Below, piece by piece: positions 92 through 36,706 of a stretch of 64,000 nucleotides of DNA. Positions within the stretch are counted from its first letter, which is position 1; every line of letters starts with the position of its first letter. Under the pieces are notes generated by a model. It was not told where the DNA came from, ran no database searches, and saw only the letters and a list, made by a program, of their open reading frames with translations. The translations under genes and the position numbers were made by a program. The stretch lies in the IMG/VR virus record IMGVR_UViG_3300049460_000128, positions 62,001 to 126,000 of that record, one strand, 5' to 3'.

Positions 92-1675
92 TCACATAAT
101 TGCAAGAGGCATTGAGTCATCATCTTCTGGACTGACAATCTCTTTCAAGCTTTCGCTGTAATCTTCGTTAAGCCAACCAATAATAGCATCAAGAATACGT
201 ACCACCAATAAGGTGGCTGAAATCAAATCATCATGTTCGCCACTCTTAGCCGCATAGCTGGCGCCGCTACTTACGAAGTTCTTGAATTGACGAATCAGTG
301 ATTGACTGTTGACTTGCATACGGCCACTTTCCATCAATGATTTCAGCTTACTGCATGCACTCAGTTTCTTCGCATTGCTGGTGTTCAGACCCTTGCGGAA
401 ACGACCACGACCCTGTCCAGCCACACGTTTTTCACTCACAAAGATACCTGGGAAGTTATGCTCACCCGTATCTTCAATGATTTGCAGTACAGCTTCGCCG
501 ATACTGTTGTTTTCAACAGTCCAGAATATCTCAGGCTCTCCTTGTTGTTCTGGATTCTCCAGCAGACTTTGATTCAACATCAACAAGGTTTGCATGAGAA
601 TTTTGATCTGCCCTCGTGGTGGAGTTTTGTTGTGCTGCCACTCAGCAACTTGAATCATTTCAGGTACTTGAAATACCTGAATAGCCGCATAGTCACCACC
701 TGTACCCAAACATGGATCCAATCCCAACAGGAAGGTCTTATTTGGTTCAGGCTCGCAGAACCAACGTACTTGACCGGTATAGAATTCTGGTTCGCTGTAA
801 CGCAGTTGCACCAATGTCAGAGCATCAATTAAGGTCTCGTCATCTGATACGAATTCGCATTCAAATTCCTGTTGGAATCGTGCGGCACCCAAACTGGCGC
901 GGAATGGTGCAGCCCATGCTTCATCTCGATCTGGGTGACGATCCCACTTGACCTTGATAGGAAAGAAACCATTTGCACCTTCGCCATTTGGCAGCTGATT
1001 ACCAAATTCGTCAGTATTTTGATTTGCTCCACGCCAGATCTTAGCAAATTGGTCTTCGTCATTCTTTGGCGTTGATGTGATAATGCAGCCACCACCAGTA
1101 GCCAGAACAGGCTGAATAGCAGTCCAGAATTCGTTTGCCATACTTGGACGCACGAATGCAAACTCGTCGCAGTACAGAAGGGTAATGGACAGACCACGAC
1201 CAGCATCGGCGGTGGTTGCACGCGCAGTAATGGCCGAACCATTGTCGAATGAGATGGTACCTTTGTTGTACTCCATCACACCAGCTCGTAAATGGTTTGG
1301 GCATTCCTCGTAGCCGTATCGAATACGGTCCATAATCTCCATAGCCTGATTGAACTTATTAGCAGCAATCAGAATCTTGGTGTCTGGGACAAACATTGCA
1401 CGCCACAGCAGATATGCAGCAGCCACGGTAGTTTTACCCATTTGTCGTCCAGTCAATGATACACAGAAGCGATGATTGTGGTACGCTTCAATCATCTCGT
1501 GCTGGAATGGATACAACACGAGTGGAATAGAGCCCTTGATTGGGTGCTGAACTTTCAGGAAATTCTCGATGAAATAAAGTGGATCATCCAGGCATTTTTC
1601 CAGTTCTTCTCGTTGTGTTTTGGTGAAAGGAACCTTACTGTGTCCTTTCTTGGTGAGTTGATACTCGTTAGCCAT
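92..1675 (-). CDS. terL: Terminase large subunit (T4 gp17-like)
   Basis: Walker A GRQMGKTT, Walker B LLYCDEFAF, TSTP coupling motif, C-terminal RNase H nuclease (GLDPCLG...HDDL). Confidence 0.95.
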   Translation of the reverse strand: MANEYQLTKKGHSKVPFTKTQREELEKCLDDPLYFIENFLKVQHPIKGSIPLVLYPFQHEMIEAYHNHRFCVSLTGRQMGKTTVAAAYLLWRAMFVPDTKILIAANKFNQAMEIMDRIRYGYEECPNHLRAGVMEYNKGTISFDNGSAITARATTADAGRGLSITLLYCDEFAFVRPSMANEFWTAIQPVLATGGGCIITSTPKNDEDQFAKIWRGANQNTDEFGNQLPNGEGANGFFPIKVKWDRHPDRDEAWAAPFRASLGAARFQQEFECEFVSDDETLIDALTLVQLRYSEPEFYTGQVRWFCEPEPNKTFLLGLDPCLGTGGDYAAIQVFQVPEMIQVAEWQHNKTPPRGQIKILMQTLLMLNQSLLENPEQQGEPEIFWTVENNSIGEAVLQIIEDTGEHNFPGIFVSEKRVAGQGRGRFRKGLNTSNAKKLSACSKLKSLMESGRMQVNSQSLIRQFKNFVSSGASYAAKSGEHDDLISATLLVVRILDAIIGWLNEDYSESLKEIVSPEDDDSMPLAIM

Positions 1676-3443: not shown

Positions 3444-3532
3444 GGAGTGCTCCCGTCAATAATCCTATTTAGCGTACCAGACGGAATGAAAGTATGTGTT
3501 AACGATATGAGCCAAGTGTCATACTCCAATAG

Positions 3533-7345: not shown

Positions 7346-10210
7346 TTAGGTCAACGAATCGCCTGAGTTACGGATACGAACTGGCAAGTAGATGAACTCA
7401 ACCGACTTGATCGGTTGGATGTACATGTCACACCACAATTCGTTACGGTTACGACGTTCTGCGGTGTTGTTCGACGTATCGCAAACAACTGCGAAGTCTT
7501 CCAGGGCGCGCAGACCAACCAAACCAATCAGGAAGCGTTCGATAGTAGTCTTGAATGCATCACGAGTCTGCAAGTCATTCTGTTCGAACAAGAACGGCTT
7601 GGAGATATTGTCCAACTGGTAACGCAGGTAGTTGGCCAAACGAGCAACGTTGATACGATCCAAGGCGCTAGCAACTGGGCTCAAAGTCTTCTGTCCATAC
7701 ACTACCAGACCACGATTCGGGATGTAAGCAATCGGGTTGATCTTGTTCTGGTACAAGACGTCGCGCTGACCTTGGTTCAAGATTACTGGCTTGTATTCAC
7801 CTTCAGAAGTCAAGTAACCAACTGATGCTGCATTGGTAACCAAACCACGGTTGAAACCAGCAGGAGCGAACCACTGATAAGCAACTTGGTCATTGTACGC
7901 AATCGTACGCAGAGCAATGGTCGAAGGTGGGACCATAATTTCGGTACCATCAACGTTAGTGCTCAGACCCCATGGGTAATAGACACCCACGTTCGTGTTG
8001 CTAGAAGTCAAACCATCATCGCCGTTACTTGCGGCATTGTTGGCATTCGTTGCCCAACGTTGGATCGAAGTGCTGTCTGGTGTCAGACGTGCTGGGGTGT
8101 CACCAACAATGAACGAAACTTCTTTCTGGTCAGTGTTGAGGGTGATCATCTCATCGATCAGTTCTGGGTAGCCAGGAGCTGCCAACAGGTTGTAGTAAAC
8201 CATTTCCGAACGGATCTCTTGATTACCAGCCACCACCGCAGCCATAGCACGAACAACCATAGTACGCTGAGCTTTACGGCCCATGTATGGTGAACCGTCA
8301 ACTGCATTGCCGCTTGTGGTTACCCAACGACCAACATTGGTTACTGGTGGGAAGACAACAGTGTCCAGACCAACCGTGTAAGTGTTCAGCGAAAAGTCGG
8401 TGTTCGCATCGTAGCCACCTTCAGCGAAGTATGTGCCTTTCCATTCTTTGACGTTGTAGGTACCAAAGCGGGTGTTGAACAACAGAGTACCAGCCGAGTG
8501 TGTACGTGGATCAACGCAGTCTGGATCAACGAAGTTACTCAGAACCAGATCGTTTTCGCTTGTGCTGTTACGAACGTAGTCGATAGTTGCACCAGTGTAG
8601 TTCGGACCTGAGTCTTGACGTGCATCAGCAAACACGATGCCGTATGGTGTGGTTTGATCAGTATTGTCGATCAGAACCCAACGACGGGAGTTGGCTTGAT
8701 AGCGATACAGTTTTGGGTAGTTTTCCAGATCGCTGGAATCCAACCACAGATCGTTGTCAACCAGTGACGAACCATCCAATTGATAGTTTGGTGCCGAGCC
8801 AGCAATTTGCACGCCGTGCTTATCGGTCATTGGATACATCTTGCGATAACCCAACCACTGATCGCCATCACATACCATGATGTCAGCTTGGAAATTGGTG
8901 TTGAACCACATACGACCATCTACTGGGTCAGTGGAAGGTTCAACGTAGCTTTGTTCGTAAACCAACTGCGACCATGCACTACCTTGCCATACGCGCAATT
9001 GTTGACCAGCCAATGGATTTTGACTTGTGCCTTCAACGTTGTACTTAACGTAAACGGTGCCGTTAGTTGGTGTTGCGCCCAGGGCGGCGTTTGCGGCCAC
9101 ATCATCCGCGTACATTGGCGCATCAGCGACAACGAAAGCACCAACGGACGAGCTGTAGTATTTCACTACGAACTTAGTGCCGCTGTTAAGAGCTGTGGTC
9201 TTGATCCATACGTCACCAGAAATGCTTCCTTGAGGAACACGATTGTGGGTAGCATAAGTCAGTTTGACGCTTTTGGTGACGCCTGCTGACAACTGCATGG
9301 ATGCCAATGGGGTGCCGGTAACGTTCTGGAGTTCAACACTGTCCAGGATGAAGTTAAAACTGATACGACCAGCCGAGTCATTGGTTGCAATGATTTTATT
9401 GTTCAAGCTTGGTGCTGCTGCGATTGCGGCATTGATATCCGTAATGGCCTGTTGAACGCCGTTTGAAGTCAATACGATCACGACACCATTGATACTGAAC
9501 GAATCGTTTGGTGTGATGTTGGTGATACCCGTCGAGCCACGGATGATGTTGCGGGTCATCTTCCAGTTATTGGAACCAACCAGATACCACACGCCGTTCA
9601 ATTTCTCGAACATGCGGTTAGTGGCTTCAATGGTCACAACTGCGAAGTCGCCGTCTTCACCGAATGCAGCTTGTGGGAAACCAGTCGCGATGTCGTAGTT
9701 TGTTGCATCGCTTACAACCAAGATTGGTTGTTTCAGGAATGGGTCCAAGCTCGATGCGCCAGTGCTCTGGAACACACCAAACTGAGTGTTGACCAGATCC
9801 AGCCAGTAAGTACCGTTCAGTGGGGCACCACGTGGGGCTGAAACACTTGCATCCAGTTCTGCCAGATCGATGTCTGCACGAACCACGTATGCGGCGTTGT
9901 TGATACCCAGGAATTGGTATGCAGCGTGCAGACCATATTCATTAAGTTCATGGGCGTGAACTGGTGTACCTTGCACGGTGGCAAAGAATGGATCACCGAA
10001 TGTTTGATTCAATTCGCGTTGGCTGGTAGCCAGGTACAGCTTGCCGGCTTCACTTGGGACGGTGCCAGGAGCGATACCAACACCAGTTGGCGATGCTTTG
10101 TTATTGCGTGTTGCAAAAACGATCAATGGGACCGTGCCGGGACCGGCACTACCATAAATGGCTTCATTGATGATCTGTACATCTACGCCAGGTGAGACTA
10201 AAGTTGCCAT
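7346..10210 (-). CDS. gp18: Contractile tail sheath protein (gp18-like) with large internal insertion
   Basis: N-terminal MATLVSPGVDV; C-terminal WFAPAGFNRG...INPI...GQKTL...LDRINVARL...FEQND. Confidence 0.95.
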   Translation of the reverse strand: MATLVSPGVDVQIINEAIYGSAGPGTVPLIVFATRNNKASPTGVGIAPGTVPSEAGKLYLATSQRELNQTFGDPFFATVQGTPVHAHELNEYGLHAAYQFLGINNAAYVVRADIDLAELDASVSAPRGAPLNGTYWLDLVNTQFGVFQSTGASSLDPFLKQPILVVSDATNYDIATGFPQAAFGEDGDFAVVTIEATNRMFEKLNGVWYLVGSNNWKMTRNIIRGSTGITNITPNDSFSINGVVIVLTSNGVQQAITDINAAIAAAPSLNNKIIATNDSAGRISFNFILDSVELQNVTGTPLASMQLSAGVTKSVKLTYATHNRVPQGSISGDVWIKTTALNSGTKFVVKYYSSSVGAFVVADAPMYADDVAANAALGATPTNGTVYVKYNVEGTSQNPLAGQQLRVWQGSAWSQLVYEQSYVEPSTDPVDGRMWFNTNFQADIMVCDGDQWLGYRKMYPMTDKHGVQIAGSAPNYQLDGSSLVDNDLWLDSSDLENYPKLYRYQANSRRWVLIDNTDQTTPYGIVFADARQDSGPNYTGATIDYVRNSTSENDLVLSNFVDPDCVDPRTHSAGTLLFNTRFGTYNVKEWKGTYFAEGGYDANTDFSLNTYTVGLDTVVFPPVTNVGRWVTTSGNAVDGSPYMGRKAQRTMVVRAMAAVVAGNQEIRSEMVYYNLLAAPGYPELIDEMITLNTDQKEVSFIVGDTPARLTPDSTSIQRWATNANNAASNGDDGLTSSNTNVGVYYPWGLSTNVDGTEIMVPPSTIALRTIAYNDQVAYQWFAPAGFNRGLVTNAASVGYLTSEGEYKPVILNQGQRDVLYQNKINPIAYIPNRGLVVYGQKTLSPVASALDRINVARLANYLRYQLDNISKPFLFEQNDLQTRDAFKTTIERFLIGLVGLRALEDFAVVCDTSNNTAERRNRNELWCDMYIQPIKSVEFIYLPVRIRNSGDSLT

Positions 10211-21080: not shown

Positions 21081-21965
21081 GTGGTTATGGACTGGATGCG
21101 GTTTTTACCGTGTGATCGAACGGCAAAGATTCCACGACAGTTAATTGAGTTGCCCCGGTGCGAGCTGGGGCAATCTCCTTTGGAGCTAGCCATTCAGGCG
21201 GTCAATGATATTGTGGCCAAGTATCCAGCCCCCTATACCTTGATGTTGAGTGGTGGCATTGATAGTCAGGCGATGTTATATGCTTGGGTGAAAGCTGGAG
21301 TTGAGTTTAATACCTTGACGTTTCAATATGGTCATTACAACCTTCATGACATAGAAGCCCTTCAGAGATTTGTTGATGCATTGGCATTACCAATCACATT
21401 GACCTATATGGATTTCAACGTGATATCATTTTTGGAAAATGAATACGATCAGTATGCTACCAAGTATGACTGTTCGAGTCCCCAGATTTGCACTCATATA
21501 CGGTGTAGTGAATGGGTCAAAGAGGGTACTGTGGTGTTCAGTGGCAATTTCGTCATGAGTCCCACAAATGGTGGTCCCATGTTGAGTCATGCCATATTGG
21601 GAATAAGGCGATATGCCGAGATCGAGCAAAGATCGATCGTGCCATTTTTCTTCCTGCATACGCCACAGTTGGCATATTCGTTTATCCCGTATGAAATTCG
21701 GGGTGCAAAATCTGCTTATGAAATGAAGACTGGTATGTATAGGGCAGCAGGCTTTCCCATATTGCCGCAAGCTGACAAGTATACGGGATTTGAACGTATC
21801 AAGGATCAATATGACAACATTGACGTATCGCTGAAAACCAAACTTCAATATGCAGAAAAGCCCAGTACCAGGCCCTTTGATCTAATATACCGGTATCCAT
21901 ATGAAACTAAATTCAATGACCCAAGAGTAGATTTTATCTTCTCTTTCCTAAAGGATAAGCCATGA
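21081..21965 (+). CDS. PP-loop ATP pyrophosphatase (asparagine synthase/QueC-like superfamily), paralog A
   Basis: LMLSGGIDSQA PP-loop; shares YxCxSPQ and KYTGFExIK with 33744-34649. Confidence 0.75.
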   Translation: MVMDWMRFLPCDRTAKIPRQLIELPRCELGQSPLELAIQAVNDIVAKYPAPYTLMLSGGIDSQAMLYAWVKAGVEFNTLTFQYGHYNLHDIEALQRFVDALALPITLTYMDFNVISFLENEYDQYATKYDCSSPQICTHIRCSEWVKEGTVVFSGNFVMSPTNGGPMLSHAILGIRRYAEIEQRSIVPFFFLHTPQLAYSFIPYEIRGAKSAYEMKTGMYRAAGFPILPQADKYTGFERIKDQYDNIDVSLKTKLQYAEKPSTRPFDLIYRYPYETKFNDPRVDFIFSFLKDKP

Positions 21966-23545
21966 ACTATATTATAGACTTTGAACCACATGTTAGTGCT
22001 GTGCAGATCAGCCAATACATGACTGACAATAATCTGACTGTGTTGTCAGTCTATGATCATTTTGAACACGTCTACGTTGTCACTGGTGCCATTCCACCAA
22101 AGACTGATGCAGTTGCGTCCGTTGTGATCGATGACACACATGCCATTAAACTGTTGGATGTAGTGCCGATTACCGACGATGCCCCTGAAATTACGTTTGA
22201 TCATGACGATCAAAATTGGTGGAAAGTAGTAAGCTTGATTCAAACTGATCTTGATGCGCCTACAACAACTATGAAACGCAAAGGTCATAGTGTTAACGTG
22301 TATCTGGTTGACAGCGGCATTACCGCATTGCATCCAGAATTTGCGGATTCTGATATCACAAACTTGTTCTCGGTGAATGGCACCTTTGACGATCTAACGG
22401 GTCATGGTACCGCCTTGGCGTCCTTGATCACTGGTAAGACTTGCAGTATTGCCGACCCAGCCCTGAAGGTTGTTAAGATCTTTGACAATAGTGGCAATGT
22501 CAAACAAAGCCAATTGTTGGCTGCAATGGATGCAATCATTGCTGATGTGGTGGCTAATCCAACCAAATTAGCAATTGCGAACATGAGTTGGGCAATTCCA
22601 CGTAATGAATATTTGGATGCCAAAATTCAATTGATGATTGATCGTGGTATCGTTGTTGTTGCGGCAGCGGGCAATAGTGGTTTGTCAATTGACGACGTTA
22701 CCCCAGCGGCCATTGATCAAGTGATCACGATTGGCGCGTATGACCAATCGTTCCACCCATGTGACTTCTCCAGCTATACTGGCACATCTGATCTGAACTA
22801 TACTGAGGGTGCTACCAACAATGGTGCATTGGATGGTTGGGCACCTGGTGAAAAGATCTACGTCGCCAATGTGAGTGGTGGCTACAGCTATGCGGTTGGT
22901 ACCAGTTTGTCGGCTGCTATCCATACTGCCATTTGTGCATATAATGGCATGCAGATGTTAGATGCTGATGGTGCCGTACTGACCTGTATCGAAAGCATTG
23001 TGACTGATACCAAAGCGATGTCATTGAGTCGTAAAGATTTGATGGTATATCCGGATAGCAAATATAATGACTCAGTCAACAAGGTGTCGACTTGTTTCAA
23101 TGTATTCACAGCTAGCCAGCGTGTCCCTAAACTGGTTGAGAATATTGCATTCACGGTCGGCATTCCAAACTGTCGTCGTTTGTTCCATCCATTGATGACT
23201 GCAAGTTATGAAGTATTGGGTGAAATCCCGGAAGGTCTGACTTTGTATCGTGGTATGCTTTATGGTTCGCCGACAACTGATCAAGTTGACTATGAATTGA
23301 AAACATTTGAAGTGGATGTTACCACTATGGATGGGCATACAATAAACCAGTTGGTGAATATTCTGATCAAGCAACCAGAATACGACCCGACCTTGTTGCC
23401 AGCGAATGATCCAGTATTGTCAGTCATGTACATGACTTGTTCTGGTTTCACATGTGGTAGCTGCGGTGGTAGTAATTCGTGTGGGTGCGGTAATACCAAA
23501 GCTGGTGGTTGCGAATGCCTGTGCCTGGGCTGCGATTGCCCGTAA
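21962..23545 (+). CDS. Subtilisin-like S8 serine protease with N-terminal prodomain and Cys-rich C-terminal tail
   Basis: Triad VDSG / GHGT / GTSLSAA plus AAAGN oxyanion Asn; 10 Cys in the last 35 aa. Confidence 0.9.
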   Translation: MNYIIDFEPHVSAVQISQYMTDNNLTVLSVYDHFEHVYVVTGAIPPKTDAVASVVIDDTHAIKLLDVVPITDDAPEITFDHDDQNWWKVVSLIQTDLDAPTTTMKRKGHSVNVYLVDSGITALHPEFADSDITNLFSVNGTFDDLTGHGTALASLITGKTCSIADPALKVVKIFDNSGNVKQSQLLAAMDAIIADVVANPTKLAIANMSWAIPRNEYLDAKIQLMIDRGIVVVAAAGNSGLSIDDVTPAAIDQVITIGAYDQSFHPCDFSSYTGTSDLNYTEGATNNGALDGWAPGEKIYVANVSGGYSYAVGTSLSAAIHTAICAYNGMQMLDADGAVLTCIESIVTDTKAMSLSRKDLMVYPDSKYNDSVNKVSTCFNVFTASQRVPKLVENIAFTVGIPNCRRLFHPLMTASYEVLGEIPEGLTLYRGMLYGSPTTDQVDYELKTFEVDVTTMDGHTINQLVNILIKQPEYDPTLLPANDPVLSVMYMTCSGFTCGSCGGSNSCGCGNTKAGGCECLCLGCDCP

Positions 23546-23559
23546 TTCTCTAGGAACAT

Positions 23560-24879
23560 ATGGATATTAGTGTTATTGGCGGCGGTTATGTGGGCGTAAT
23601 CACCGCCATTTCCTTGGCTCAAATGTATGATCACAAGGTGATTGTAGTTGAACCTGACGAAGAAAAATTAGCCCATCTTCAACGTGGCTTGATGCCATTT
23701 CATGAACCATATTCTGAGCCTGTACTCCAGAGTATGGTTTACCGTAGTAGGCTGATGTTTGTGCCTGCACTCACGAGTCAATTTGGAACCATTCAGATCA
23801 TTGCTGTGGGGACTCCTGCCAAGCAGGATGGTTCAACTGACCTCACCCAAGTATTTGATGCTGCGACTACGATTGCTCGTTTGATGGATCAAGACACCAT
23901 CATTGCAATCAAATCAACGGTGCCGGTTGGCACTTGCGAGAAGATTGAGCAATTGATCAGCCATATCTTGATTGAACGTGGAGTCGTGTATATGTGGGAA
24001 GTCATCAGCAATCCTGAATTTTTGAGCCAAGGTCGTGCGATGGCGGATGCTCGTTCGCCTGATCGAATTATCATTGGTGCCAATACGTCATTTGGGCGTT
24101 TATATGGCAAAGTATTCCAGCACTCAAGTGCCATTGAATACGTGAGTCAAAAAGCTGGCGAGATGATCAAGTACATGTCAAATGCCATTCTGGCTACTAA
24201 AATTTCAATCATGAATGAAGCAGCGGCGTTTGCTGAGCATCATGGTATTGACATCATGGAAGTGGTTGATGGTGTTGGACGAGATGAACGAATTGGAATG
24301 TCGCATTTGACTCCAGGCATTGGATATGGTGGGTCCTGCTTACCAAAAGATGTCAGTAGCTTGCTTCACCAAGGACGCGAAGCCAATACACCATTCACTG
24401 TTTTGGAGACAGTTAGCGCGATTAATAATGATCAACACAGTCAGCTGTGTAAAAAGGTCATACGACGTTTTGGTGACGATCTCGTCAATCTCCGGGTCGG
24501 TATTTGGGGTGTATCTTTCAAACGTGATACCGATGATATGCGGAATGCCAAGTCGATTCCAATCATCAAGTTTTTACTCGAGCGTGGTGCCACTGTTGTA
24601 TTGCATGATCCCAAAGCAGTTTTCACTTGCATGGACATTATGGATACTGTATTATCAGCTGAACAAGTGAACCGTCTTTCGTTTAACATGGACAAGATGG
24701 TTGTTGCAACGAATGTTGATGCCTTGTTGTTGTTGAGTGACTGGGAAGAATATGACAATATTGATACCATGCGCTTACTGGGCATTATGAAACAACCATG
24801 TTTGTTTGATGGGCGTAATTTCTGGCAACGAGATTACATGATCCAAGAAGGTTTCGAATATCACGCTATAGGACGATAA
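23560..24879 (+). CDS. ugd: UDP-glucose 6-dehydrogenase
   Basis: IGGGYVG NAD site, IAVGTP, KSTVPVG, SNPEFL.QG, GIGYGGSCLPKD, FKRDTDDMR, FDGRN. Confidence 0.92.
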   Translation: MDISVIGGGYVGVITAISLAQMYDHKVIVVEPDEEKLAHLQRGLMPFHEPYSEPVLQSMVYRSRLMFVPALTSQFGTIQIIAVGTPAKQDGSTDLTQVFDAATTIARLMDQDTIIAIKSTVPVGTCEKIEQLISHILIERGVVYMWEVISNPEFLSQGRAMADARSPDRIIIGANTSFGRLYGKVFQHSSAIEYVSQKAGEMIKYMSNAILATKISIMNEAAAFAEHHGIDIMEVVDGVGRDERIGMSHLTPGIGYGGSCLPKDVSSLLHQGREANTPFTVLETVSAINNDQHSQLCKKVIRRFGDDLVNLRVGIWGVSFKRDTDDMRNAKSIPIIKFLLERGATVVLHDPKAVFTCMDIMDTVLSAEQVNRLSFNMDKMVVATNVDALLLLSDWEEYDNIDTMRLLGIMKQPCLFDGRNFWQRDYMIQEGFEYHAIGR

Positions 24880-27510: not shown

Positions 27511-28086
27511 ATGTCAATCTGGAGCGTAGATGTAGAATCTGACGGCCCTTGCCCCGGCAAGCACTCGATGATTAGTTTTGGGATGGTGCGAGTTGATGAT
27601 CAACTTACTACCACGTTTGGTGGCCGCCTCAAGCCAATTAGCGATATTTGGGTACCTGATGCCTTAGCGGTGTCTGGATTCACCCGCGAGGATACACTGT
27701 TGTTTGATGACCCTGCGGTTGTCATGCAGCAAGCAGCAGACTTCATTGCTGCAAATAATGTTGGGGATCGTCCAGTTTTCATTTCCGATAACAACGGATA
27801 CGATTGGATGTTCATGCACTATTATTTCCACATGTATTTGAATCACAATCCATTTGGTTGGAGTTCACGCCGCATTGGTGACTTCTACTGTGGCTTGCGT
27901 AAGAATTTCCGGGCAAGTGGTCGTGACTGGCACAAATTCCGTAAGACCCGTCACACACATGATCCGGTCGATGATGCAAAGGGCAACGCTGAAGCACTCG
28001 TGGGTATGTGTCACAAGTGGCAAATTGAATTGCCTGGTGTCACCCTGCAACCATTAACCAATCCAGTTCAACCAAGGCAAAAATGA
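27511..28086 (+). CDS. DEDDh 3'-5' exonuclease
   Basis: DVESDGP (ExoI), SDNNGYDW (ExoII), HDPVDDA (ExoIII). Confidence 0.85.
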   Translation: MSIWSVDVESDGPCPGKHSMISFGMVRVDDQLTTTFGGRLKPISDIWVPDALAVSGFTREDTLLFDDPAVVMQQAADFIAANNVGDRPVFISDNNGYDWMFMHYYFHMYLNHNPFGWSSRRIGDFYCGLRKNFRASGRDWHKFRKTRHTHDPVDDAKGNAEALVGMCHKWQIELPGVTLQPLTNPVQPRQK

Positions 28087-28901
28087 ATCAAGAACAAAAA
28101 CGAATGCAGGCACAGATTATCGCAGCATTGGGCGTTCAGCCGGTGATCGATCCTGTATTGGAGATCATCAAACGTGTGGGTTTCCTCGCGTCGGCGCTGC
28201 GTGCTGCAAACAAAGAATCCTATATCCTGGGTATAAGCGGTGGCGTCGATTCGACGACCTCCGGTCGCCTGGCAGTTCTGGCCTGTGAACAACTCCGCGG
28301 CCTGGACTATCACGCACAGTTCATCGCTGTGCGTTTGCCGTACGGCGAGCAACGTGACGAAGCAGATGCGCAACGTGCGCTTGACTTCATCAAGCCCCAC
28401 AAAGTGATCACCGTGAACATCAAGCCGGCTGTCGATGCGATCATGGCGTCCATGGATCTGGCCGGCTTGACTGACAAGCAGATCGACTTCCTGAAAGGCA
28501 ATGTGAAAGCGCGTCAGCGCATGATCGTGCAATATGCACTCGCGGGTCAGTACAATGGCCTGGTGATCGGCACCGATCATGCCAGCGAAGCACTGATGGG
28601 CTTCTTCACCAAGCACGGCGATGGCGCGGCCGACATTGTGCCGAAAGCCACGCTGGAAAAAGAGCAAGTCCGTGAAGTAGCGGCTGAGTTGGGTGCGCCT
28701 TCTGAGCTGGTTGGCAAACCACCAACTGCTGACCTGGAAGACCTGAATCCAGGTTTGCTGGACGAAGTTGCGTATGGCGTAACCTATGCGACGATCAGCA
28801 AATTCCTGCGCGGTCTGGACATCAGCGAAAACGATGCCGCAATCATCATCAAGCAATACTACAGTACCGCGCACAAGCGTAGTCTGGCTCCTGGTATCTG
28901 A
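28083..28901 (+). CDS. nadE: NH3-dependent NAD+ synthetase
   Basis: LGISGGVDST, AVRLPYG.Q.DE.DA, GNVKARQRM..QY, GTDHASE...GFFTK.GDGAAD, PTADLED. Confidence 0.93.
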   Translation: MNQEQKRMQAQIIAALGVQPVIDPVLEIIKRVGFLASALRAANKESYILGISGGVDSTTSGRLAVLACEQLRGLDYHAQFIAVRLPYGEQRDEADAQRALDFIKPHKVITVNIKPAVDAIMASMDLAGLTDKQIDFLKGNVKARQRMIVQYALAGQYNGLVIGTDHASEALMGFFTKHGDGAADIVPKATLEKEQVREVAAELGAPSELVGKPPTADLEDLNPGLLDEVAYGVTYATISKFLRGLDISENDAAIIIKQYYSTAHKRSLAPGI

Positions 28902-28912
28902 AAGGAAACAAT

Positions 28913-29335
28913 ATGACCAAAGTGACACACCCCGTTCCCGACTATTACTTCTTCGTGCTGATGCGTACCGATCTGGCATCCATGAATCCAGGTAAGGCTG
29001 TTGCCCATGGCGCACATGCTGCCTCGATGTTCGAGATGGCCATGAAGGAAGTCAAGGATCACAAGATCCAGGCTGCATTGACCAAGTGGCGCGAATCGGC
29101 CGGCACGTTCGGTACTGCGATCACCTTGGCTGTCAACGATCGTGAACTGCATGAAAGTGTGGACAACCTCACCGCTGCTGGTTACCTGGCCGGTGTCGTA
29201 CATGACCCCACTTACCCAATCACCGATGGTCAGACGTTCCACCTGATCCCGCTCGACACCTGTGGTTGGGCGTTTGTGGACAAAGACGACCCAGTTGCCA
29301 AAGCTCTGCGTGCTCGCCTGAGTCTGATGGCGTAA
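28913..29335 (+). CDS. Peptidyl-tRNA hydrolase type 2 (Pth2)-like
   Basis: LMRTDLASMNPGKAVAHGAHAA and later VVHD...T.G. Confidence 0.75.
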   Translation: MTKVTHPVPDYYFFVLMRTDLASMNPGKAVAHGAHAASMFEMAMKEVKDHKIQAALTKWRESAGTFGTAITLAVNDRELHESVDNLTAAGYLAGVVHDPTYPITDGQTFHLIPLDTCGWAFVDKDDPVAKALRARLSLMA

Positions 29336-29423: not shown

Positions 29424-29729
29424 ATGGAAATCATCGAAACTATTCCCGCCTTTAAAAAATATTGGTCAGACGACCATATCAGTCACCATTTCAAATATGG
29501 AGTTGTGGTCCGGTATGCACACATGACGAAAGCGATTGACGCTTTCGTGACTATCTACTGCGGATTTGACAGTACGGTATGGACCTACCGTAAGACCCAC
29601 ACGGTAGGTGATCTGAATATCGTATATGTGCATGACTTGGATTGGCAGGTCATTGCTAAACTGCATGGGATTGACTTTATTCCAATGGTCACTTCAATCT
29701 TGGTGAATCCGAGGTTCAATGATGTATGA
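29424..29729 (+). CDS. Hypothetical protein ('Y..D.DW...KL.G' family)
   Basis: IVYVHDLDWQVIAKLHGIDF. Confidence 0.7.
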   Translation: MEIIETIPAFKKYWSDDHISHHFKYGVVVRYAHMTKAIDAFVTIYCGFDSTVWTYRKTHTVGDLNIVYVHDLDWQVIAKLHGIDFIPMVTSILVNPRFNDV

Positions 29730-29994
29730 CGTGGTAGTCAAACGTTGTCTGGGGCTTGGGCTTGGTAAGTATGAGGTCGTGATTCCGCTCACTTACTTCA
29801 ATCAAATATACTCGGTATCCATGTATGCGCCGACATTCAAAGATGCGTATCATGATGCCAAAGATCATATAAGCAAGCAGCCATATTTGAAAGATGCGAA
29901 GTTCTACTATCTGGATCAGGATGCTCAACGTAGTAAATATGATCTATGGGATGATGGCATTGTGATGATGTTGATTCTCTTATTGAGTGAATAA
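29719..29994 (+). CDS. Small protein, C-terminal DD-helix family
   Basis: APTFKDAY; ends LWDDGIVMMLILLLSE. Confidence 0.65.
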   Translation: MMYDVVVKRCLGLGLGKYEVVIPLTYFNQIYSVSMYAPTFKDAYHDAKDHISKQPYLKDAKFYYLDQDAQRSKYDLWDDGIVMMLILLLSE

Positions 29995-30445
29995 GATCAT
30001 GTTTGAAGCTGCAAAACAAGAAGAGCGAGAGTTGATGAATGCTCGCATTTGGGAAGATGAAACCAAGCATCGTTTCCAATGGGCACTCATTAGTGTCTTT
30101 CCCTGCAAGGTGAATGGTGACACTGGCTGGCGTCACCATATTGAGAAGCTATTGGGACCTGAAGGTCAGGAATGGGTGCTTGGTAATTATCAAGGCTACA
30201 TCAAACGAGCAGCCGATTATGAGTTTACAACGCAGATGGAATGGTGGGATGAACCAGCCATGCGTTGTATTGTGATCTACTGCGATCACACGCTTGACTC
30301 CATCCAGGTACTTGAGCGATTGATCGATGGTGATAAAAGCAACTTCACACCATCATTATTGCTTGGATTCAAATCACCGCAATACCTTGATGGTGAGCCT
30401 TGGCAAGATCACATCATCACCAAGACCTTGTTCATGGGGTCTTGA
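29987..30445 (+). CDS. Hypothetical protein
   Basis: 152-aa ORF with IVIYCDH motif. Confidence 0.65.
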   Translation: MNKIMFEAAKQEERELMNARIWEDETKHRFQWALISVFPCKVNGDTGWRHHIEKLLGPEGQEWVLGNYQGYIKRAADYEFTTQMEWWDEPAMRCIVIYCDHTLDSIQVLERLIDGDKSNFTPSLLLGFKSPQYLDGEPWQDHIITKTLFMGS

Positions 30446-31259
30446 ACTCCGATTCGTATTCTTCAACGAATCTATGATGTCCCATCATGTTGATCATCTG
30501 GGTAGCCCAAGATTGATCTCTGTCTGGATGAGCTTGCCAATTGATCTTCACCTTAGCAAAGCCATTATTATTCCCAGTCCACAAATCATAAAATATTCCC
30601 TTGGGCGCACTCGCACCTGAGGTTGCCAATACCACTTTAGTTCGCCCGGTGGACAAACATGGTTGTATGTTTGTCCAAAATTCTTCCATCGGGCTGTGTG
30701 AAATGAAACCCATGCTATCGATATACAGAGATGATATCGTATGCCCCCGCCCGCAAGTGTTAGATGCCACCGCAAAATGGATAGATGAACCATTGTCAAA
30801 CTCAATGGCCTGTTTGTTGTTCATTAGAATCTTAGGATAGATGCCTAACAGATGGTGATGCATGAATTCAATTCGTCTACGATGCTCTTGCGTCATCGCG
30901 TAGGTACGATCAACCATGAATATTTTTCGATTAGGCTGTCGTAGGGCATCCCACAAAGCACTAGCGCTGAGCATTGATGTGGTACCAAGTTGACGTCCTG
31001 ATTGGATGATCACTCGATCGTTCTTTTGGATGATATCAAGGGCGGCGGTCTGGTAGTCGTGTACCTGGAATGGGATTGCACCCTTTATAGGATGTTGAGT
31101 GAAGCAGTTTGCCATAAAGAGTGGCAAACTTTCCAGTTGATCACTGATGAGCAGATAGGCTTCTATCTTGCTTGCACAAACTATCAGTTCGTCAATGGCT
31201 ACGGTTGGGAATAATTCTCGAGCTTTAGAGAGTGCTCGCTCTTTGATGTCAATATTCAT
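30432..31259 (-). CDS. Terminase large subunit ATPase-domain paralog with degenerate Walker motifs and no nuclease domain
   Basis: QHPIKG.IP, GRQLGTT, LYIDSMGF, EFW..IQP.L.TG, W..HPDRD..W...RF.EEYESEF all match TerL at 92-1675. Confidence 0.85.
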   Translation of the reverse strand: MNIDIKERALSKARELFPTVAIDELIVCASKIEAYLLISDQLESLPLFMANCFTQHPIKGAIPFQVHDYQTAALDIIQKNDRVIIQSGRQLGTTSMLSASALWDALRQPNRKIFMVDRTYAMTQEHRRRIEFMHHHLLGIYPKILMNNKQAIEFDNGSSIHFAVASNTCGRGHTISSLYIDSMGFISHSPMEEFWTNIQPCLSTGRTKVVLATSGASAPKGIFYDLWTGNNNGFAKVKINWQAHPDRDQSWATQMINMMGHHRFVEEYESEFKTP

Positions 31260-31395
31260 ATGTCCTCATAATGTCAGGTTGCATTACAGCCCAGGGATCG
31301 TTTACCGTCCAAGGTCACATATTTAGTTGACATCTTGCCACTTTGGTAAAGGTTGCAACATGTTAGAATGGCAAAAATAATTACGCAATTTTGCC

Positions 31396-31734
31396 ATGCA
31401 GCCAGCCGTCACATCTGAAGTCCAATTTCAAGCAATCACTCCCGAACACAGTAATCAAATGATTTGGTACGGGCGCATTGATGTGTATACCGCCAACGGG
31501 TCACGCCTGTTGAAGCAAGAATTTTCTGATCACGAATTCCAGAAGACCATTGAGTGGGCTCGTGATTGGCATACTACTGAAGATCTGGTTCCCAGTCGGG
31601 TGTTGTTGATCCCAGTGAGTATGGTTCAAACTTGGTCTGGCATTCACAAAGTGCATCATGATGCGAAGGCCGTACCAATCGATGACCTGTTCGACGATGA
31701 CTGTATTGTTATGGCAAGGCTGTCCATCATATGA
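31396..31734 (+). CDS. Small protein, C-terminal DD-helix family
   Basis: Ends LFDDDCIVMARLSII. Confidence 0.7.
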   Translation: MQPAVTSEVQFQAITPEHSNQMIWYGRIDVYTANGSRLLKQEFSDHEFQKTIEWARDWHTTEDLVPSRVLLIPVSMVQTWSGIHKVHHDAKAVPIDDLFDDDCIVMARLSII

Positions 31735-32039
31735 GCAAAGTCAAAAGCGCCATCATTGAATATACGGCGGCGAGATCAGTATATCAATCGTATTGGTCAG
31801 TGAACATCTATCCAAGCATGGATGGAATTGCTATGCCATTTGTTAGGACATTGGATCAGGTCATCACATACTTGCGTAAACTGGCACCAACATATGACAT
31901 ACACTACGAGTCAATTAAACTGGTGACACACGGTGTGACGAGTAATGGTGAGCATGATCCAAATCCCATCCTCATCAATGAAATCAACAACATATGGGAC
32001 GACGACGAACTGACTGTATTGAGATTGCGAGTGGCATGA
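31731..32039 (+). CDS. Small protein, C-terminal DD-helix family
   Basis: RTLDQVITYL; ends IWDDDELTVLRLRVA. Confidence 0.7.
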   Translation: MSKVKSAIIEYTAARSVYQSYWSVNIYPSMDGIAMPFVRTLDQVITYLRKLAPTYDIHYESIKLVTHGVTSNGEHDPNPILINEINNIWDDDELTVLRLRVA

Positions 32040-32362
32040 TGTATGACATTCTCGTCAGCTACATGCATCATCTGTCGCATCCGTGGTTCGGCATCATGGT
32101 GCCATGTGGTATGGCTATTGATACCAACATCGACGACTTCATACGCGCCGTTACCTTTGCTGACATAATTGAACGGACCAGAGTAGCGATACGGGCTGAT
32201 TCACGATCATGCAACAAAATCATTTTTACCAAAGGTCCCGTATATGTTGAAAATTTTCCTGACTTTCATACAGCCGAGCGACGCATCTATCCATCAATGC
32301 TGGTAGTTGATGACATATGGGATGATGCTGCCTTGGCTATCGTACGATTGAGTATATCATGA
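32036..32362 (+). CDS. Small protein, C-terminal DD-helix family
   Basis: Start MMYDILV; VTFADIIE; ends IWDDAALAIVRLSIS. Confidence 0.7.
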   Translation: MMYDILVSYMHHLSHPWFGIMVPCGMAIDTNIDDFIRAVTFADIIERTRVAIRADSRSCNKIIFTKGPVYVENFPDFHTAERRIYPSMLVVDDIWDDAALAIVRLSIS

Positions 32363-32712
32363 TTCCATATGGCCACTACCTGCTTGACTTGGTAATTTCG
32401 TATCGCCCCCATAATCAAAAAATGGGTCCATGGTTTGCTAGATGGTACGTGGCAAATCAGATCATCGATGATGCATATATCTACACACACGCGCCAACAT
32501 TTCATGACATAGTCGAGGAGATGAAAAAGTGGTTAACACGCGATCAATTACCACTTAATCGCATCTTTGTCATGCGTGGCATGTTAAATGAAGATCGGCA
32601 TGTTGACTTCATGAGTGCTGCCAGAAAGCTGCAAGATGGTATAGTGGAGATTGACTCATTGGAAGATGACGATCAATTGGTTTTGGCCAGACTTTCAATT
32701 GCGGAGAATTGA
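32359..32712 (+). CDS. Small protein, C-terminal DD-helix family
   Basis: APTFHDIVEEM; ends LEDDDQLVLARLSIAEN. Confidence 0.7.
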   Translation: MIPYGHYLLDLVISYRPHNQKMGPWFARWYVANQIIDDAYIYTHAPTFHDIVEEMKKWLTRDQLPLNRIFVMRGMLNEDRHVDFMSAARKLQDGIVEIDSLEDDDQLVLARLSIAEN

Positions 32713-33036
32713 TTGAACAAAGAAGTGATAATTGTGTCTAGCCATGACGGGAATCGAACCTGGTCCGGCTTTGTGATCAATGCAGGCGATAATTCACCCA
32801 ACGAACACATGAGTGTTTACACGGCGTCGTTTCACACTGTATTGTCTGGTGTTAGACAATTGGTGGAAGAAAACAACTACAAGGTGTCTCGTGTGATCTT
32901 AAAGGTGGGCCCCCTCAGATCGGACAAATACCCCAAGTTCTTCCAAGATCCAAGAGTCATATACCCCGACATGTCCTTGATTGAAGACTTGTTCGATGAC
33001 AATGAGTTTGCGGTTGCTCTTCTTAGCTGTCAGTAG
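32713..33036 (+). CDS. Small protein, C-terminal DD-helix family
   Basis: ASFHTVLSGV; ends LFDDNEFAVALLSCQ. Confidence 0.7.
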   Translation: MNKEVIIVSSHDGNRTWSGFVINAGDNSPNEHMSVYTASFHTVLSGVRQLVEENNYKVSRVILKVGPLRSDKYPKFFQDPRVIYPDMSLIEDLFDDNEFAVALLSCQ

Positions 33037-35371: not shown

Positions 35372-36706
35372 ATGGCCTATAACACCAATAATTTCATAAA
35401 ATCCACCACATTTATGGACTTAACTAGTTCGGCACTGTGGGCTCAGAATCGTATTGTGAATCGATATCGCCCATTGATTGCAAATCCTTTGATGGCAAAG
35501 CTGTCCAGCGATACTCCGGTAGAAGTCATTGTAATGGACTCTGGAATTCAACGCAATCATGTTGAATTCGCGCAAGCAACAATTGAAGACCTGTATTTTG
35601 TGCCAAACCTCCTGAACATCAGCGATGAGACTGGACACGGTACTGCAATGGCGTCTTTGATTGCTGGTGTAACTGTTGGGGTTGATCCAACTGCAACCTT
35701 GAAAATTGTCAAAATCTTTGGGGCAAGCTACGATACTTCCGAGGCTGAAATATTAGATGCCTTTGATGCAATCATTGCCTATCATGCATCAACACCAAAC
35801 GTCACGAAGATTTTGAACATGAGCTGGGCAATTCCTGCCAACGATTCAGTTAAAATCAAACTCAAGATGCTATCAGACGCTGGCGTGATATTGGTGGCTG
35901 CTGCGGGCAACTATCCTCAGTGCATTGATGACACTCTGCCGGCAGGTTTCGCCGGAGCAGTCACGGTTGCTGGATCGAAGCAATCTGACGAAGAATACAC
36001 GCAAGTATATGGTGTCAACAAGAAGATTGACATCTATGCACCAGCCGAACAGGTTTGTGTGGCGGCATTTGAAGACAACGTTGGTTATGCGACCACTGAC
36101 GGGTCATCTAGTTCGGCGGCTTTGGCTTCTGGTGTATTGAGCCTCACGCGCAAAACATTTGCCCATACCGTATCTAGTGATGATGTGAAACTGGCCACGA
36201 TGCAAAACGGTACAATTGGTGCCTTATTGGTGAATGACCGTGTGAGCTTTACTGAAAACCGTTTGTTGTATCGTCCTGATGTGAACTCTGTGCCTAGCGA
36301 TCAAGACTATTATGCAGGTAACATCACAATTGGTTCAGGTGCGGTGATCAACGTATCGTTGAATACGTTTATGCCAATCGAACAGTTTGAAAACATCTTT
36401 GACAAGTTGACGTTTGCTCTTGAGGTTGATTCTGAGTTTAGTTCATCAATTAGTGTTGGCCCACAGGGCGCCCTGACTATCGTTGACCCAGTATCGTACG
36501 TTCTTCCGCAAGACAGTGTGGTGAAAAAGGTGTCGTTCTATGTAACAGCCTCGACCACGACTATCACTATGACATCGCCAAAGATTCACTACTTCTTGTC
36601 ATCAATTGATAGTACAGATCAGGATATTGCAGCCCTTACCGATCAATTGAATTCACAAACATATTTGATCCCATTGACATTGAGTCAACTTAATAACTTC
36701 AAATAA
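35372..36706 (+). CDS. Subtilisin-like S8 serine protease, paralog 2 (no Cys tail)
   Basis: MDSG / GHGT / AAAGN / DGSSSSAA; TATAAATA upstream at ~35332. Confidence 0.85.
   Translation: MAYNTNNFIKSTTFMDLTSSALWAQNRIVNRYRPLIANPLMAKLSSDTPVEVIVMDSGIQRNHVEFAQATIEDLYFVPNLLNISDETGHGTAMASLIAGVTVGVDPTATLKIVKIFGASYDTSEAEILDAFDAIIAYHASTPNVTKILNMSWAIPANDSVKIKLKMLSDAGVILVAAAGNYPQCIDDTLPAGFAGAVTVAGSKQSDEEYTQVYGVNKKIDIYAPAEQVCVAAFEDNVGYATTDGSSSSAALASGVLSLTRKTFAHTVSSDDVKLATMQNGTIGALLVNDRVSFTENRLLYRPDVNSVPSDQDYYAGNITIGSGAVINVSLNTFMPIEQFENIFDKLTFALEVDSEFSSSISVGPQGALTIVDPVSYVLPQDSVVKKVSFYVTASTTTITMTSPKIHYFLSSIDSTDQDIAALTDQLNSQTYLIPLTLSQLNNFK

What the first reader, a model, noticed from the sequence alone, without database searches (positions are those of the whole stretch)
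30432..31259. Second terminase: nuclease-less ATPase domain with degenerate Walker A and B
Seen: it aligns by eye with residues ~30-275 of TerL (QHPIKG, GRQxG, EFW..IQP, HPDRD..W, RFxxExE). Walker A Lys is Thr (GRQLGTT vs GRQMGKTT), Walker B Glu is Ser (LYIDSMGF vs LYCDEFAF), and it stops exactly where the nuclease domain would begin. It lies antisense within the accessory array. Known: Avs1-3 NLR-like defence systems are triggered by binding large terminase. Inference: a probably inactive decoy or dominant-negative against terminase-sensing immunity, or a packaging regulator.
Basis: partly seen in the sequence, partly recalled or inferred. Interest (0 to 1): 0.65.

Follow-up and report, generated by a model that had tools for sequence, protein, structure and literature searches.

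The report
Catalytically dead large-terminase paralogue, late-expressed
A soil jumbo phage carries, besides its normal DNA-packaging enzyme (TerL), a conserved half-size copy that keeps the ATPase fold but has lost the catalytic residues and the nuclease domain and sits behind a late promoter, so it is a maintained "pseudo-terminase" that most likely acts by binding rather than by burning ATP.

Summary
Window 30432-31259(-) encodes a 275-aa protein that is 33% identical to residues 32-275 of the phage's own TerL (92-1675(-)). It folds like the T4 gp17 ATPase domain and stops at the ATPase/nuclease hinge. It has Thr for the Walker A Lys and Ser for the catalytic Glu.

It is not a decaying fragment. 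I found nine distinct members (234-284 aa) in related rhizosphere/soil jumbo phages, including the cultured Sinorhizobium phage Phosso, where it is annotated "terminase small subunit". All nine lack both catalytic residues, and none has the alternative lambda-type P-loop Lys. All end at the same point and all ORFs are intact although synonymous sites are saturated (omega about 0.2 in the one measurable pair).

In every member with flanking sequence the gene stands alone, antisense to its neighbours. All nine carry a T4-type late-promoter core (TAAATA), the motif that also precedes the portal, sheath and TerL-operon genes here. The genome encodes a gp55-type late sigma factor.

Best reading: a late, non-essential, non-catalytic TerL mimic that modulates packaging by binding. 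The Avs-decoy idea is weak, because isolated TerL ATPase domains and T4 vs.8 activate Avs2/Upx. The mechanism remains inferred.

The parts
30432..31259 (-). CDS of the TerL ATPase-domain paralogue (275 aa, P0002; stop codon 30432-30434). Walker A GRQLGTT (Thr93 in place of Lys). Walker B LYID followed by Ser182 in place of the catalytic Glu. No nuclease domain.
31263..31267 (-). Shine-Dalgarno GAGGA, 3 nt before the ATG
   Evidence: sequence read directly
31319..31332 (-). Late-promoter-like block TGTCAACTAAATAT. The [ACT]TAAATA core starts 67 nt upstream of the ATG. The block is invariant upstream of the orthologs in L004, L008 and L009.
31354..31372 (-). Second conserved upstream block GCCATTCTAACATGTTGCA in the shared divergent intergenic region. 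It contains TGCCA...TGGCA-like inverted arms in the relatives. Function unknown.
92..1675 (-). The phage's bona fide large terminase, used as comparator (527 aa, P0001): intact GRQMGKT, LYCDE and TST motifs plus the Terminase_6C nuclease domain.
3466..3472 (-). Late-promoter core CTAAATA, 29 nt upstream of the first gene (2673-3443) of the same-strand run of genes that ends in TerL.

Best explanation
The gene encodes a pseudo-ATPase: a paralogue of the TerL ATPase domain that keeps the fold but cannot hydrolyse ATP and cannot cut DNA.

It retains several pocket and scaffold residues:
- the adenine-contacting Gln;
- the P-loop Arg and Gly;
- the Walker A Ser/Thr;
- usually the Walker B Asp.

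It is transcribed late from its own T4-type late promoter, at the same time as TerL, the portal and the capsid genes. I infer that it works by binding a partner that normally contacts the TerL ATPase domain (TerL itself, the portal, an unidentified small terminase, or DNA). In that way it would tune packaging initiation or motor assembly as a non-essential accessory factor. Its conserved acidic N-terminal helical segment probably provides a protein-protein contact.

Shown: homology, fold, loss of catalytic residues across the family, purifying selection, conserved late-type promoter motif, patchy distribution.

Inferred: late expression in vivo, the lack of ATPase activity, and the binding and packaging role.
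For: - **Identity:** Terminase_6N hit; 33% identity and E=7e-43 to the phage's own TerL. AlphaFold model pLDDT 78; the best PDB matches are T4 gp17 ATPase domains (E about 5e-13, TMq 0.70).
- **Dead site, conserved as such:** nine members with T,T,T,S,I,I,I,I,I at the Walker A Lys position and S,Q,N,A,N,A,N,N,D at the catalytic Glu position. The TerL-invariant GRG Arg and the TST motif are mostly lost. Q70, R89, G92, L102, W103, N156, I160 and G260 are kept.
- **Selection:** all ORFs are intact and end at the same place. Omega is about 0.2 for window vs L004. In every other pair dS is saturated while pN is 0.42-0.61. dN is 0.99, against 0.26 for the TerL N-domain over the same window-Phosso divergence.
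- **Late promoter:** [ACT]TAAATA occurs 84 times in the genome. 50 occurrences lie in the 6.4% that is intergenic, and 47 lie upstream of a same-strand gene. Those genes include the portal, the sheath, the 1150-aa protein and the head of the TerL operon.
- **Promoter conservation:** the motif lies upstream of all nine family members, inside conserved blocks. A gp55-type late sigma factor is encoded just outside the window.
- **N-terminus:** the first 50 residues are acidic in the eight full-length members, and 72% identical in the Phosso subgroup against 51% for the core.
- **Independent support for short TerL-like partners:** other metagenomic phages carry a short TerL-like ORF directly upstream of TerL, mostly with degenerate catalytic residues.
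Against: - There is no direct evidence of binding. The TerL + paralogue complex prediction gave no verdict.
- There is no RNA or proteome data.
- The gene is far from the TerL operon and sits among accessory genes.
- It is absent from a complete 424-kb relative whose TerL N-domain is 79% identical, so it is dispensable in at least one lineage. That fits an accessory or arms-race gene as well as a regulator.
- Its roughly four-fold faster protein evolution than TerL is also what a host-interaction gene would show.
- The late motif is 67 nt from the ATG, further than the typical 20-40 nt.
Confidence: 0.4

Rival explanations
1. Immune-related TerL mimic. Made alongside TerL, it interferes with host sensors that recognise the TerL ATPase domain (Avs1-3, Upx). 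It could soak them up non-productively, or it could shield TerL.
For: - It keeps the TerL ATPase fold while being enzymatically harmless.
- It is accessory and patchily distributed, and it evolves faster than TerL.
- It is timed with TerL.
- The authors of PMC13601566 speculate that terminase-like proteins such as vs.8 might be anti-defence proteins.
Against: - In the same paper, isolated TerL ATPase domains activate EcAvs2 (>1000-fold depletion) and all Upx homologs tested.
- T4 vs.8 is toxic with EcAvs2, so it is an activator, not a blocker.
- EcAvs2 contacts the ATP held by TerL's Walker motifs, and SeAvs3 is described as reading active-site residues and the bound ATP. This protein lacks the Walker A Lys and the catalytic Glu, so tight competitive binding is not expected.
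- A sensor that oligomerises on binding is triggered, not titrated, by a mimic.
- The host and its defence systems are unknown.
Confidence: 0.2
2. Functional small-terminase equivalent, as annotated in phage Phosso. It would be a TerL-derived, non-catalytic subunit that recognises phage DNA and/or stimulates TerL at packaging initiation.
For: - The Phosso ortholog is deposited as 'terminase small subunit'.
- Pfam finds no T4-type TerS in the window's record. The two genes upstream of TerL have no TerS hit.
- Other phages place a short TerL-like ORF exactly where TerS normally sits.
- Late expression fits.
Against: - It matches no TerS family, only TerL families.
- Its N-terminus is acidic rather than a basic DNA-binding module.
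- It is not adjacent to TerL.
- It is absent from a complete close relative, which an essential TerS should not be.
- The window's record is only about 70% complete, so a real TerS may lie elsewhere.
Confidence: 0.12
3. Inter-phage weapon. It would be a dominant-negative TerL fragment that poisons the packaging motors of co-infecting related phages or satellites, while the phage's own motor is insensitive.
For: - A dead subunit with a retained fold is the classic design of a dominant-negative.
- The distribution is accessory and patchy, and the evolution is fast.
Against: - There is no evidence of competitors or satellites.
- Late expression is late for exclusion.
- It would have to spare its own 33%-identical TerL, for which nothing is known.
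Confidence: 0.08
4. Non-functional relic of a TerL duplication or of a split terminase gene.
For: - Catalytic residues and the nuclease domain are lost.
- One member (P0005, L009) is shorter, 234 aa, and sits on a very long branch.
Against: - There are nine intact ORFs of nearly the same length at 23-52% identity, with saturated synonymous sites and pN below pS.
- The start, stop, RBS and promoter are conserved.
- No downstream nuclease-encoding half and no intein-like junction is present, unlike the split TerLs seen in L071, L083 and L089.
Confidence: 0.02

Closest known systems
T4 gp17-type large terminase (TerL), N-terminal ATPase domain (Pfam PF03237 Terminase_6N; PDB 2o0h, 2o0j, 3cpe)
   Same: - Clear homology and the same fold.
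- It covers the ATPase domain up to the hinge.
- It keeps the adenine-contacting Gln, the P-loop Arg/Gly/Thr, the NGS strand, EFW..IQP and the HPDRD..W..G..F..E.EF segment.
   Different: - No nuclease domain.
- Walker A Lys, catalytic Glu, the GRG Arg (6 of 9 members) and most of the TST coupling motif are lost across the family.
- The N-terminal segment is remodelled and acidic, with about 13 extra residues.
- It lacks the roughly 16-residue loop that TerLs of this clade have near position 230.
- It evolves about 4 times faster.
T4 vs.8 (phrog_1488), an uncharacterised ATPase-only TerL-like protein reported to activate EcAvs2 (PMC13601566)
   Same: - A stand-alone TerL-ATPase-like protein.
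- It is encoded away from the terminase genes.
- Its function is unknown.
   Different: - vs.8 keeps its Walker A/B motifs (GRQSGKS, IIDE).
- It has no significant sequence similarity to this protein (BLASTP E=0.064).
- It belongs to a different PHROG.
- It is 219 aa.
Small terminase (TerS), the label given to the Phosso ortholog
   Same: - A small, non-nuclease packaging-associated label.
- Late expression.
- No recognisable TerS elsewhere in the record.
   Different: - No TerS family match.
- TerL-derived fold.
- Acidic N-terminus.
- Not adjacent to TerL.
- Absent in a complete relative.
Short TerL-like ORFs immediately upstream of TerL in uncultured large phages (L022, L059, L044, L062)
   Same: - Nuclease-less, about 270-315 aa.
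- Walker A Lys replaced (V, I, L, I).
- Catalytic Glu replaced in three of four (C, D, N).
   Different: - They are adjacent to TerL and on the same strand.
- They form a separate clade nested in their own TerL lineage in the ML tree, though a single origin is not rejected (AU p=0.38).
- The L022 copy keeps DE and has a lambda-type upstream Lys, so it may be active.
Catalytically inert paralogous subunits of ring or oligomeric ATPases, e.g. clamp-loader delta-prime (general knowledge; analogy only)
   Same: - A dead paralogue of an oligomeric P-loop ATPase.
- It is retained under selection and is presumed to act through contacts.
   Different: - There is no evidence here of incorporation into the motor.
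- It belongs to a different ATPase superfamily branch.

Membership tests
Large terminase TerL (T4 gp17 type) | ATPase-domain homology and fold (Terminase_6N) | tested here: met
   Pfam E=2.4e-12, above the cut-off. Foldseek to gp17 ATPase: E about 5e-13, TMq 0.70. hhalign to a TerL profile: E=1e-59.
Large terminase TerL (T4 gp17 type) | Walker A lysine, either canonical GKT/S or the lambda-type Lys at the front of the P-loop | tested here: not met
   Thr93 aligns with gp17 K166. None of 9 family members has Lys there. The alternative position holds S, S, S, L or H.
Large terminase TerL (T4 gp17 type) | Catalytic glutamate after the Walker B Asp (gp17 E256) | tested here: not met
   Ser182. The family has S,Q,N,A,N,A,N,N,D, against Glu in all 36 TerLs compared.
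Large terminase TerL (T4 gp17 type) | C-terminal RNase H-like nuclease domain (Terminase_6C) | tested here: not met
   The protein ends at the hinge. There is no Terminase_6C hit. No downstream in-frame or adjacent nuclease ORF exists.
Small terminase TerS | Match to a TerS family | tested here: not met
   Only TerL families hit in Pfam and PHROGs, for the window protein and for the Phosso ortholog.
Small terminase TerS | Basic N-terminal DNA-binding module | tested here: not met
   The N-terminal 50 aa are acidic, pI 4.4-6.0 in 8 of 9 members.
Small terminase TerS | Ring oligomer that binds pac/cos DNA and stimulates TerL | not testable with these tools
   This needs biochemistry. The TerL + paralogue complex prediction gave no verdict.
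T4 vs.8 family (phrog_1488) | Sequence membership in the family | tested here: not met
   BLASTP E=0.064, confined to the P-loop. vs.8 hits phrog_1488 only. This protein hits TerL PHROGs only.
Anti-Avs decoy or anti-defence protein | Binds a TerL sensor without activating it and rescues the phage | not testable with these tools
   There is no assay here. Published data on related constructs point to activation (PMC13601566).
T4-type late gene | TATAAATA-like late promoter upstream, and a gp55-type sigma factor in the genome | tested here: met
   ACTAAATA lies 67 nt upstream, within a block conserved in orthologs. Late sigma factor: phrog_12791, E=2e-75. Actual timing was not measured.

The most novel reading that the evidence does not exclude
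The protein is a dedicated non-catalytic subunit or mimic of the packaging ATPase. Two versions are possible. In the first, it takes a place in, or docks on, the TerL motor/portal complex as an obligate 'dead' regulatory subunit, which would make this a heteromeric viral packaging motor. In the second, it is a TerL look-alike that has shed the active-site features read by TerL-sensing immune receptors and protects the real TerL. Either would be a new functional class of phage protein derived from TerL. It has probably arisen more than once, given the TerL-adjacent short copies in other phages.
Probability: 0.15. Interest if true: 0.8.

Novelty: new variant of a known kind. Interest (0 to 1): 0.55.

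Why it matters
TerL is the most conserved protein of tailed phages. It is the engine of genome packaging and a main target of bacterial pattern-recognition immunity (Avs1-3, Upx).

A paralogue that keeps the fold, has been catalytically dead since before the window-phage/Phosso split, and is expressed with the packaging genes implies that the TerL ATPase domain has a selectable function independent of ATP hydrolysis. That function would be regulatory, structural or immunological.

The only comparable protein discussed in the literature, T4 vs.8, keeps its Walker motifs and is explicitly called an open question.

Because one member sits in a cultured phage (Phosso, on Sinorhizobium meliloti), the question is directly testable by knockout, pull-down and sensor co-expression.

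The finding also corrects database labels. 'Terminase small subunit' rests on no homology evidence found here: only large-terminase families match. 'Terminase' is homologous but non-catalytic.

It also warns that a missing canonical Walker A Lys alone does not mark a dead TerL, because many full-length TerLs use a lambda-type P-loop.

Tried and rejected
1. **Complex prediction, TerL + paralogue.** No verdict (score 0.00); not evidence either way.
2. **IMG/VR scan with the single protein.** Found nothing. The scan with the 4-member alignment and the JGI metagenome scan returned only TerLs at 36% identity or less. No further family members came from those collections; the members came from the word-indexed protein search and from Phosso.
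3. **Nucleotide megablast of the locus against isolate phages.** No match.
4. **phrog_5989 as a possible 'short terminase' family.** Rejected, because the real TerL N-half matches it better (1e-56).
5. **Kinship with T4 vs.8.** Rejected by sequence.
6. **Origin of the duplication.** The ML tree places the family outside the sampled TerLs on long branches. AU tests reject neither a sister position to the phage's own TerL clade (p=0.25) nor union with the TerL-adjacent short copies (p=0.38). The origin is unresolved.
7. **Synteny comparison with the paralogue-free relative G001.** Uninformative, because even the neighbouring NAD synthase is absent there.
8. **Expression data.** Only one DNA run (rhizosphere metagenome, probably the source) holds the locus.
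9. **The exhaustive representative search.** Deliberately not run. With the family profile, ordinary TerLs out-score distant members (160-190 vs 100 bits), so its top-150 list would be TerLs. The operators also flagged its cost.
10. **Sigma-70 promoter and terminator scan around the gene.** Nothing above shuffled expectation for the gene's own strand.

Full report
**1.

Window 30432-31259(-) is an intact 275-aa ORF. It has a GAGGA ribosome-binding site 3 nt before the ATG. It matches Pfam Terminase_6N (E=2.4e-12; 47 bits against a cut-off of 22) and several PHROG TerL families (best 1.3e-22).

The phage's real large terminase is at 92-1675(-): 527 aa, with Terminase_6N plus the Terminase_6C nuclease domain. 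BLASTP between the two gives 33% identity over 246 residues, E=7e-43, pairing paralogue 46-272 with TerL 32-275.

An AlphaFold model (pLDDT 78) finds T4 gp17 ATPase-domain structures as its best PDB matches (E about 5e-13, TMq 0.70). An HMM alignment to gp17 places the paralogue's Thr under K166 of SRQLGKT and its Ser under the catalytic E256 of YIDE. The protein ends three residues after the last TerL-aligned position, before the nuclease domain begins.

The window is part of a 296.6-kb IMG/VR jumbo-phage record with exactly two Terminase_6N matches.

**2. It is a conserved family, not debris.**

The word-indexed protein search found three short homologs (273, 272 and 234 aa). A search with the five-member alignment found five more of 281-284 aa. 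One of them, P0007, appears by the alignments to be the Phosso protein itself. Sinorhizobium phage Phosso (469 kb) carries its copy at 249808-250653, deposited as "terminase small subunit".

Across the nine distinct sequences:
- The Walker A Lys position reads T,T,T,S,I,I,I,I,I.
- The catalytic Glu position reads S,Q,N,A,N,A,N,N,D.
- All stop within a few residues of the same point.

A caveat arose from the metagenome scan. Many full-length TerLs have K[SA]RQLG[IL]ST, i.e. the Lys moved to the front of the P-loop as in lambda gpA (that comparison is from my own knowledge), with DE intact. A missing canonical Lys alone therefore proves nothing. The family has S, S, S, L or H at that alternative position and also lacks the Glu, so the inactive call stands.

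I compared 36 TerLs with the family position by position. The family keeps Q70, R89, G92, L102, W103, N156, G157, I160, G260 and F272. It also keeps the Walker A Ser/Thr at position 94 in all nine members. It has lost K93 and E182 in all nine, and the GRG arginine in six of nine. Most of the TST motif is also lost. This is the pattern of a pseudoenzyme that preserves the fold and perhaps nucleotide binding; the nucleotide-binding part is inference.

**3. Selection.**

All ORFs are open. For window vs L004, dN=0.44 and dS is about 2.2, so omega is about 0.2. For all other pairs synonymous sites are saturated (pS 0.77-0.90) while pN is 0.42-0.61. Between the window phage and Phosso the paralogue's dN is 0.99, against 0.26 for the TerL N-domain. 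It is therefore constrained but evolves about four times faster than TerL.

**4. Origin.**

In an ML tree of ATPase domains the family is monophyletic (99/93) on long branches and does not nest with the phage's own TerL clade. AU tests do not reject a sister position to that clade (p=0.25). Because Phosso and the window phage both have the gene, the duplication predates their split.

A complete 424-kb relative (G001) has a TerL N-domain 79% identical to the window's. It has no copy detectable with the family profile. PA5oct-like phages also show only one place per record. The gene is therefore dispensable in some lineages. Among about 50,700 isolate phage genomes only Phosso has a member.

**5. 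Expression signals.**

K-mer enrichment over 188 upstream regions singled out the T4 late-promoter core (ACTAAATA in 12 regions vs 0.44 expected; TATAAATA in 9 vs 0.33). [ACT]TAAATA occurs 84 times in the genome. 50 occurrences are in the 6.4% that is intergenic, and 47 lie upstream of a same-strand gene.

Genes carrying the motif include:
- the portal (54131-55894);
- the sheath (7346-10210);
- the 1150-aa protein (55945-59397);
- the first gene of the TerL operon (2673-3443).

The paralogue has ACTAAATA 67 nt upstream. The block TGTCAACTAAATAT is invariant upstream of the orthologs in L004, L008 and L009, although the coding sequences are saturated at synonymous sites. The Phosso-type members have [CA]ATAAATA at -37 to -40 inside a conserved GTTAACTGG...ATAAATA block.

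The genome encodes a late sigma factor (phrog_12791, E=2e-75; phrog_234, 1.6e-18) just beyond the window's end. In the eight members with usable flanking gene calls, the gene stands alone and antisense to both neighbours. That arrangement makes sense if it is a late gene embedded in a differently timed block. No RNA data exist for this phage, so late expression is inferred.

**6. The N-terminus.**

Residues 1-45 form two helices. This segment is acidic in the eight full-length members. In the Phosso subgroup it is more conserved than the ATPase core (72% vs 51% identity). A profile-profile alignment matches it only with low confidence to TerL's N-terminal helices, with about 13 extra residues. 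I read it as a protein-interaction module. It does not look like a basic TerS DNA-binding domain.

**7. Mechanism.**

The best-supported reading is a late, non-catalytic TerL mimic that acts by binding a partner of the TerL ATPase domain and so modulates packaging (confidence 0.4).

- The isolated ATPase domain of five terminases strongly activates EcAvs2.
- The ATPase domain alone activates all Upx homologs tested.
- T4's ATPase-only TerL-like protein vs.8, which has intact Walker motifs, is toxic with EcAvs2.
- EcAvs2 contacts the ATP held by TerL's Walker motifs, and SeAvs3 is described as reading active-site residues and the bound ATP.

A mimic lacking those features is more likely to be unseen than to be a high-affinity sink, and a mimic that is bound should trigger the sensor. 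The same authors do speculate that such proteins may be anti-defence factors, so I keep this rival at 0.2.

A TerS-equivalent role (0.12) fits the Phosso label and the lack of a recognisable TerS. It fits poorly with the acidic N-terminus, the distance from TerL and the absence from G001. A dominant-negative weapon against competitors (0.08) and a relic (0.02) complete the list.

**8. Comparison with what is known.**

The protein is a homolog of TerL but fails three defining features of a functional large terminase: the Walker A Lys, the catalytic Glu and the nuclease domain. It is not a member of the vs.8 family (BLASTP E=0.064; different PHROG).

The literature I could search contains no analysis of a catalytically dead TerL paralogue. 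The AP-J-162 genome paper merely lists "three terminases". I rate it a new variant of a known kind, namely stand-alone TerL-ATPase-like proteins.

A second, apparently independent class surfaced in uncultured phages. These are short TerL-like ORFs directly upstream of TerL, mostly with degenerate catalytic residues. They suggest that non-catalytic TerL derivatives are a recurrent solution.

**9. Limits.**
- There is no binding, expression or activity measurement.
- The complex prediction gave no verdict.
- The window's record is about 70% complete.
- The origin of the duplication is unresolved.
- The exhaustive representative search was not run, because TerLs out-score distant members with the family profile and the operators flagged its cost.

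Noticed in passing
window 29719-29994 and 31396-33036 (+); also L004 1505-3119 and L008 2067-3406: A tandem array of 5-6 paralogous small ORFs (about 90-120 aa). They share a C-terminal motif, acidic run + L..[VI].RL[SR][IV] (e.g. DDDCIVMARLSII, DDDELTVLRLRVA, DDAALAIVRLSIS). The array lies on both sides of the paralogue and is conserved in relatives. The members scanned (31396-31734, 31731-32039, 32359-32712) have no Pfam hit, and 31396-31734 has no PHROG hit.
   Followed up: partly
L022 2994-3941, L059 4913-5857, L044 1203-2069, L062 4539-5438: A different class of short (about 270-315 aa) nuclease-less TerL-like ORFs. They sit immediately upstream of, and partly overlap, a normal TerL in uncultured large phages, one of them a complete 363-kb genome. 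The Walker A Lys is replaced by V, I, L or I, and the catalytic Glu by C, D or N in three of four. The L022 copy keeps DE and has a lambda-type upstream Lys. No isolate phage has them.
   Followed up: partly
L071 5935-6864, L083 5920-6858, L089 3923-4855, L082/L130 4791-5660: TerL genes that break right after the ATPase domain. The ORF continues as C-L-x-G... for about 35 residues and then stops. This looks like the N-half of a split intein or an intein junction in TerL. From memory, atypical split inteins are known in metagenomic TerL genes. I did not look for the C-terminal half.
   Followed up: no
L085-L088 and most of L112-L184: Many full-length TerLs of uncultured aquatic phages have a deviant P-loop, K[SA]RQLG[IL]ST. 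The Lys is at the front and Ile/Leu occupies the canonical Lys position, with DE intact. So 'no GKT' does not mean an inactive terminase.
   Followed up: partly
whole genome G000; late sigma factor at G000:C1:126710-127774(-), just beyond the window's end: A T4-like late transcription system. [ACT]TAAATA is about 20-fold enriched in intergenic DNA and precedes the structural genes. A gp55-type late sigma factor (354 aa) is encoded.
   Followed up: yes
window 21962-23545, 23560-24879, 28083-28901, 28913-29335, 35372-36706: Auxiliary genes around the paralogue: two subtilisin-like S8 peptidases, a UDP-glucose/GDP-mannose dehydrogenase, an NAD synthase and a PTH2-like peptidyl-tRNA hydrolase. The NAD synthase is absent from the complete relative G001.
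   Followed up: no
L004/L005/L007 1068-1508 vs L006: An HNH endonuclease gene sits inside the small-ORF array in three otherwise identical contigs. No gene is called there in a fourth contig from the same study, although a position-by-position comparison found no base differences. So this may be a gene-calling difference rather than a mobile insertion.
   Followed up: no
L098 4190-4215, L185, L187 and L188 upstream regions; window 31354-31372: Conserved non-coding blocks in the divergent intergenic region upstream of the paralogue, beyond the promoter core. They read GGTTAACGCATT[GC]TTA and GTTAACTGG in the Phosso subgroup, and GCCATT[CT]TA[AG]CATGT[TG]GCA in the window subgroup. They are possible regulator sites or the divergent gene's promoter.
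   Followed up: no
PV764938.1 249808-250653 (Phosso); AP-J-162 paper PMC11242549: Database labels for this family are inconsistent. It appears as 'terminase small subunit' in Phosso, as 'hypothetical protein' in compost metagenomes, and possibly as one of the 'three terminases' listed for AP-J-162. None reflects a TerL-derived, non-catalytic protein.
   Followed up: partly
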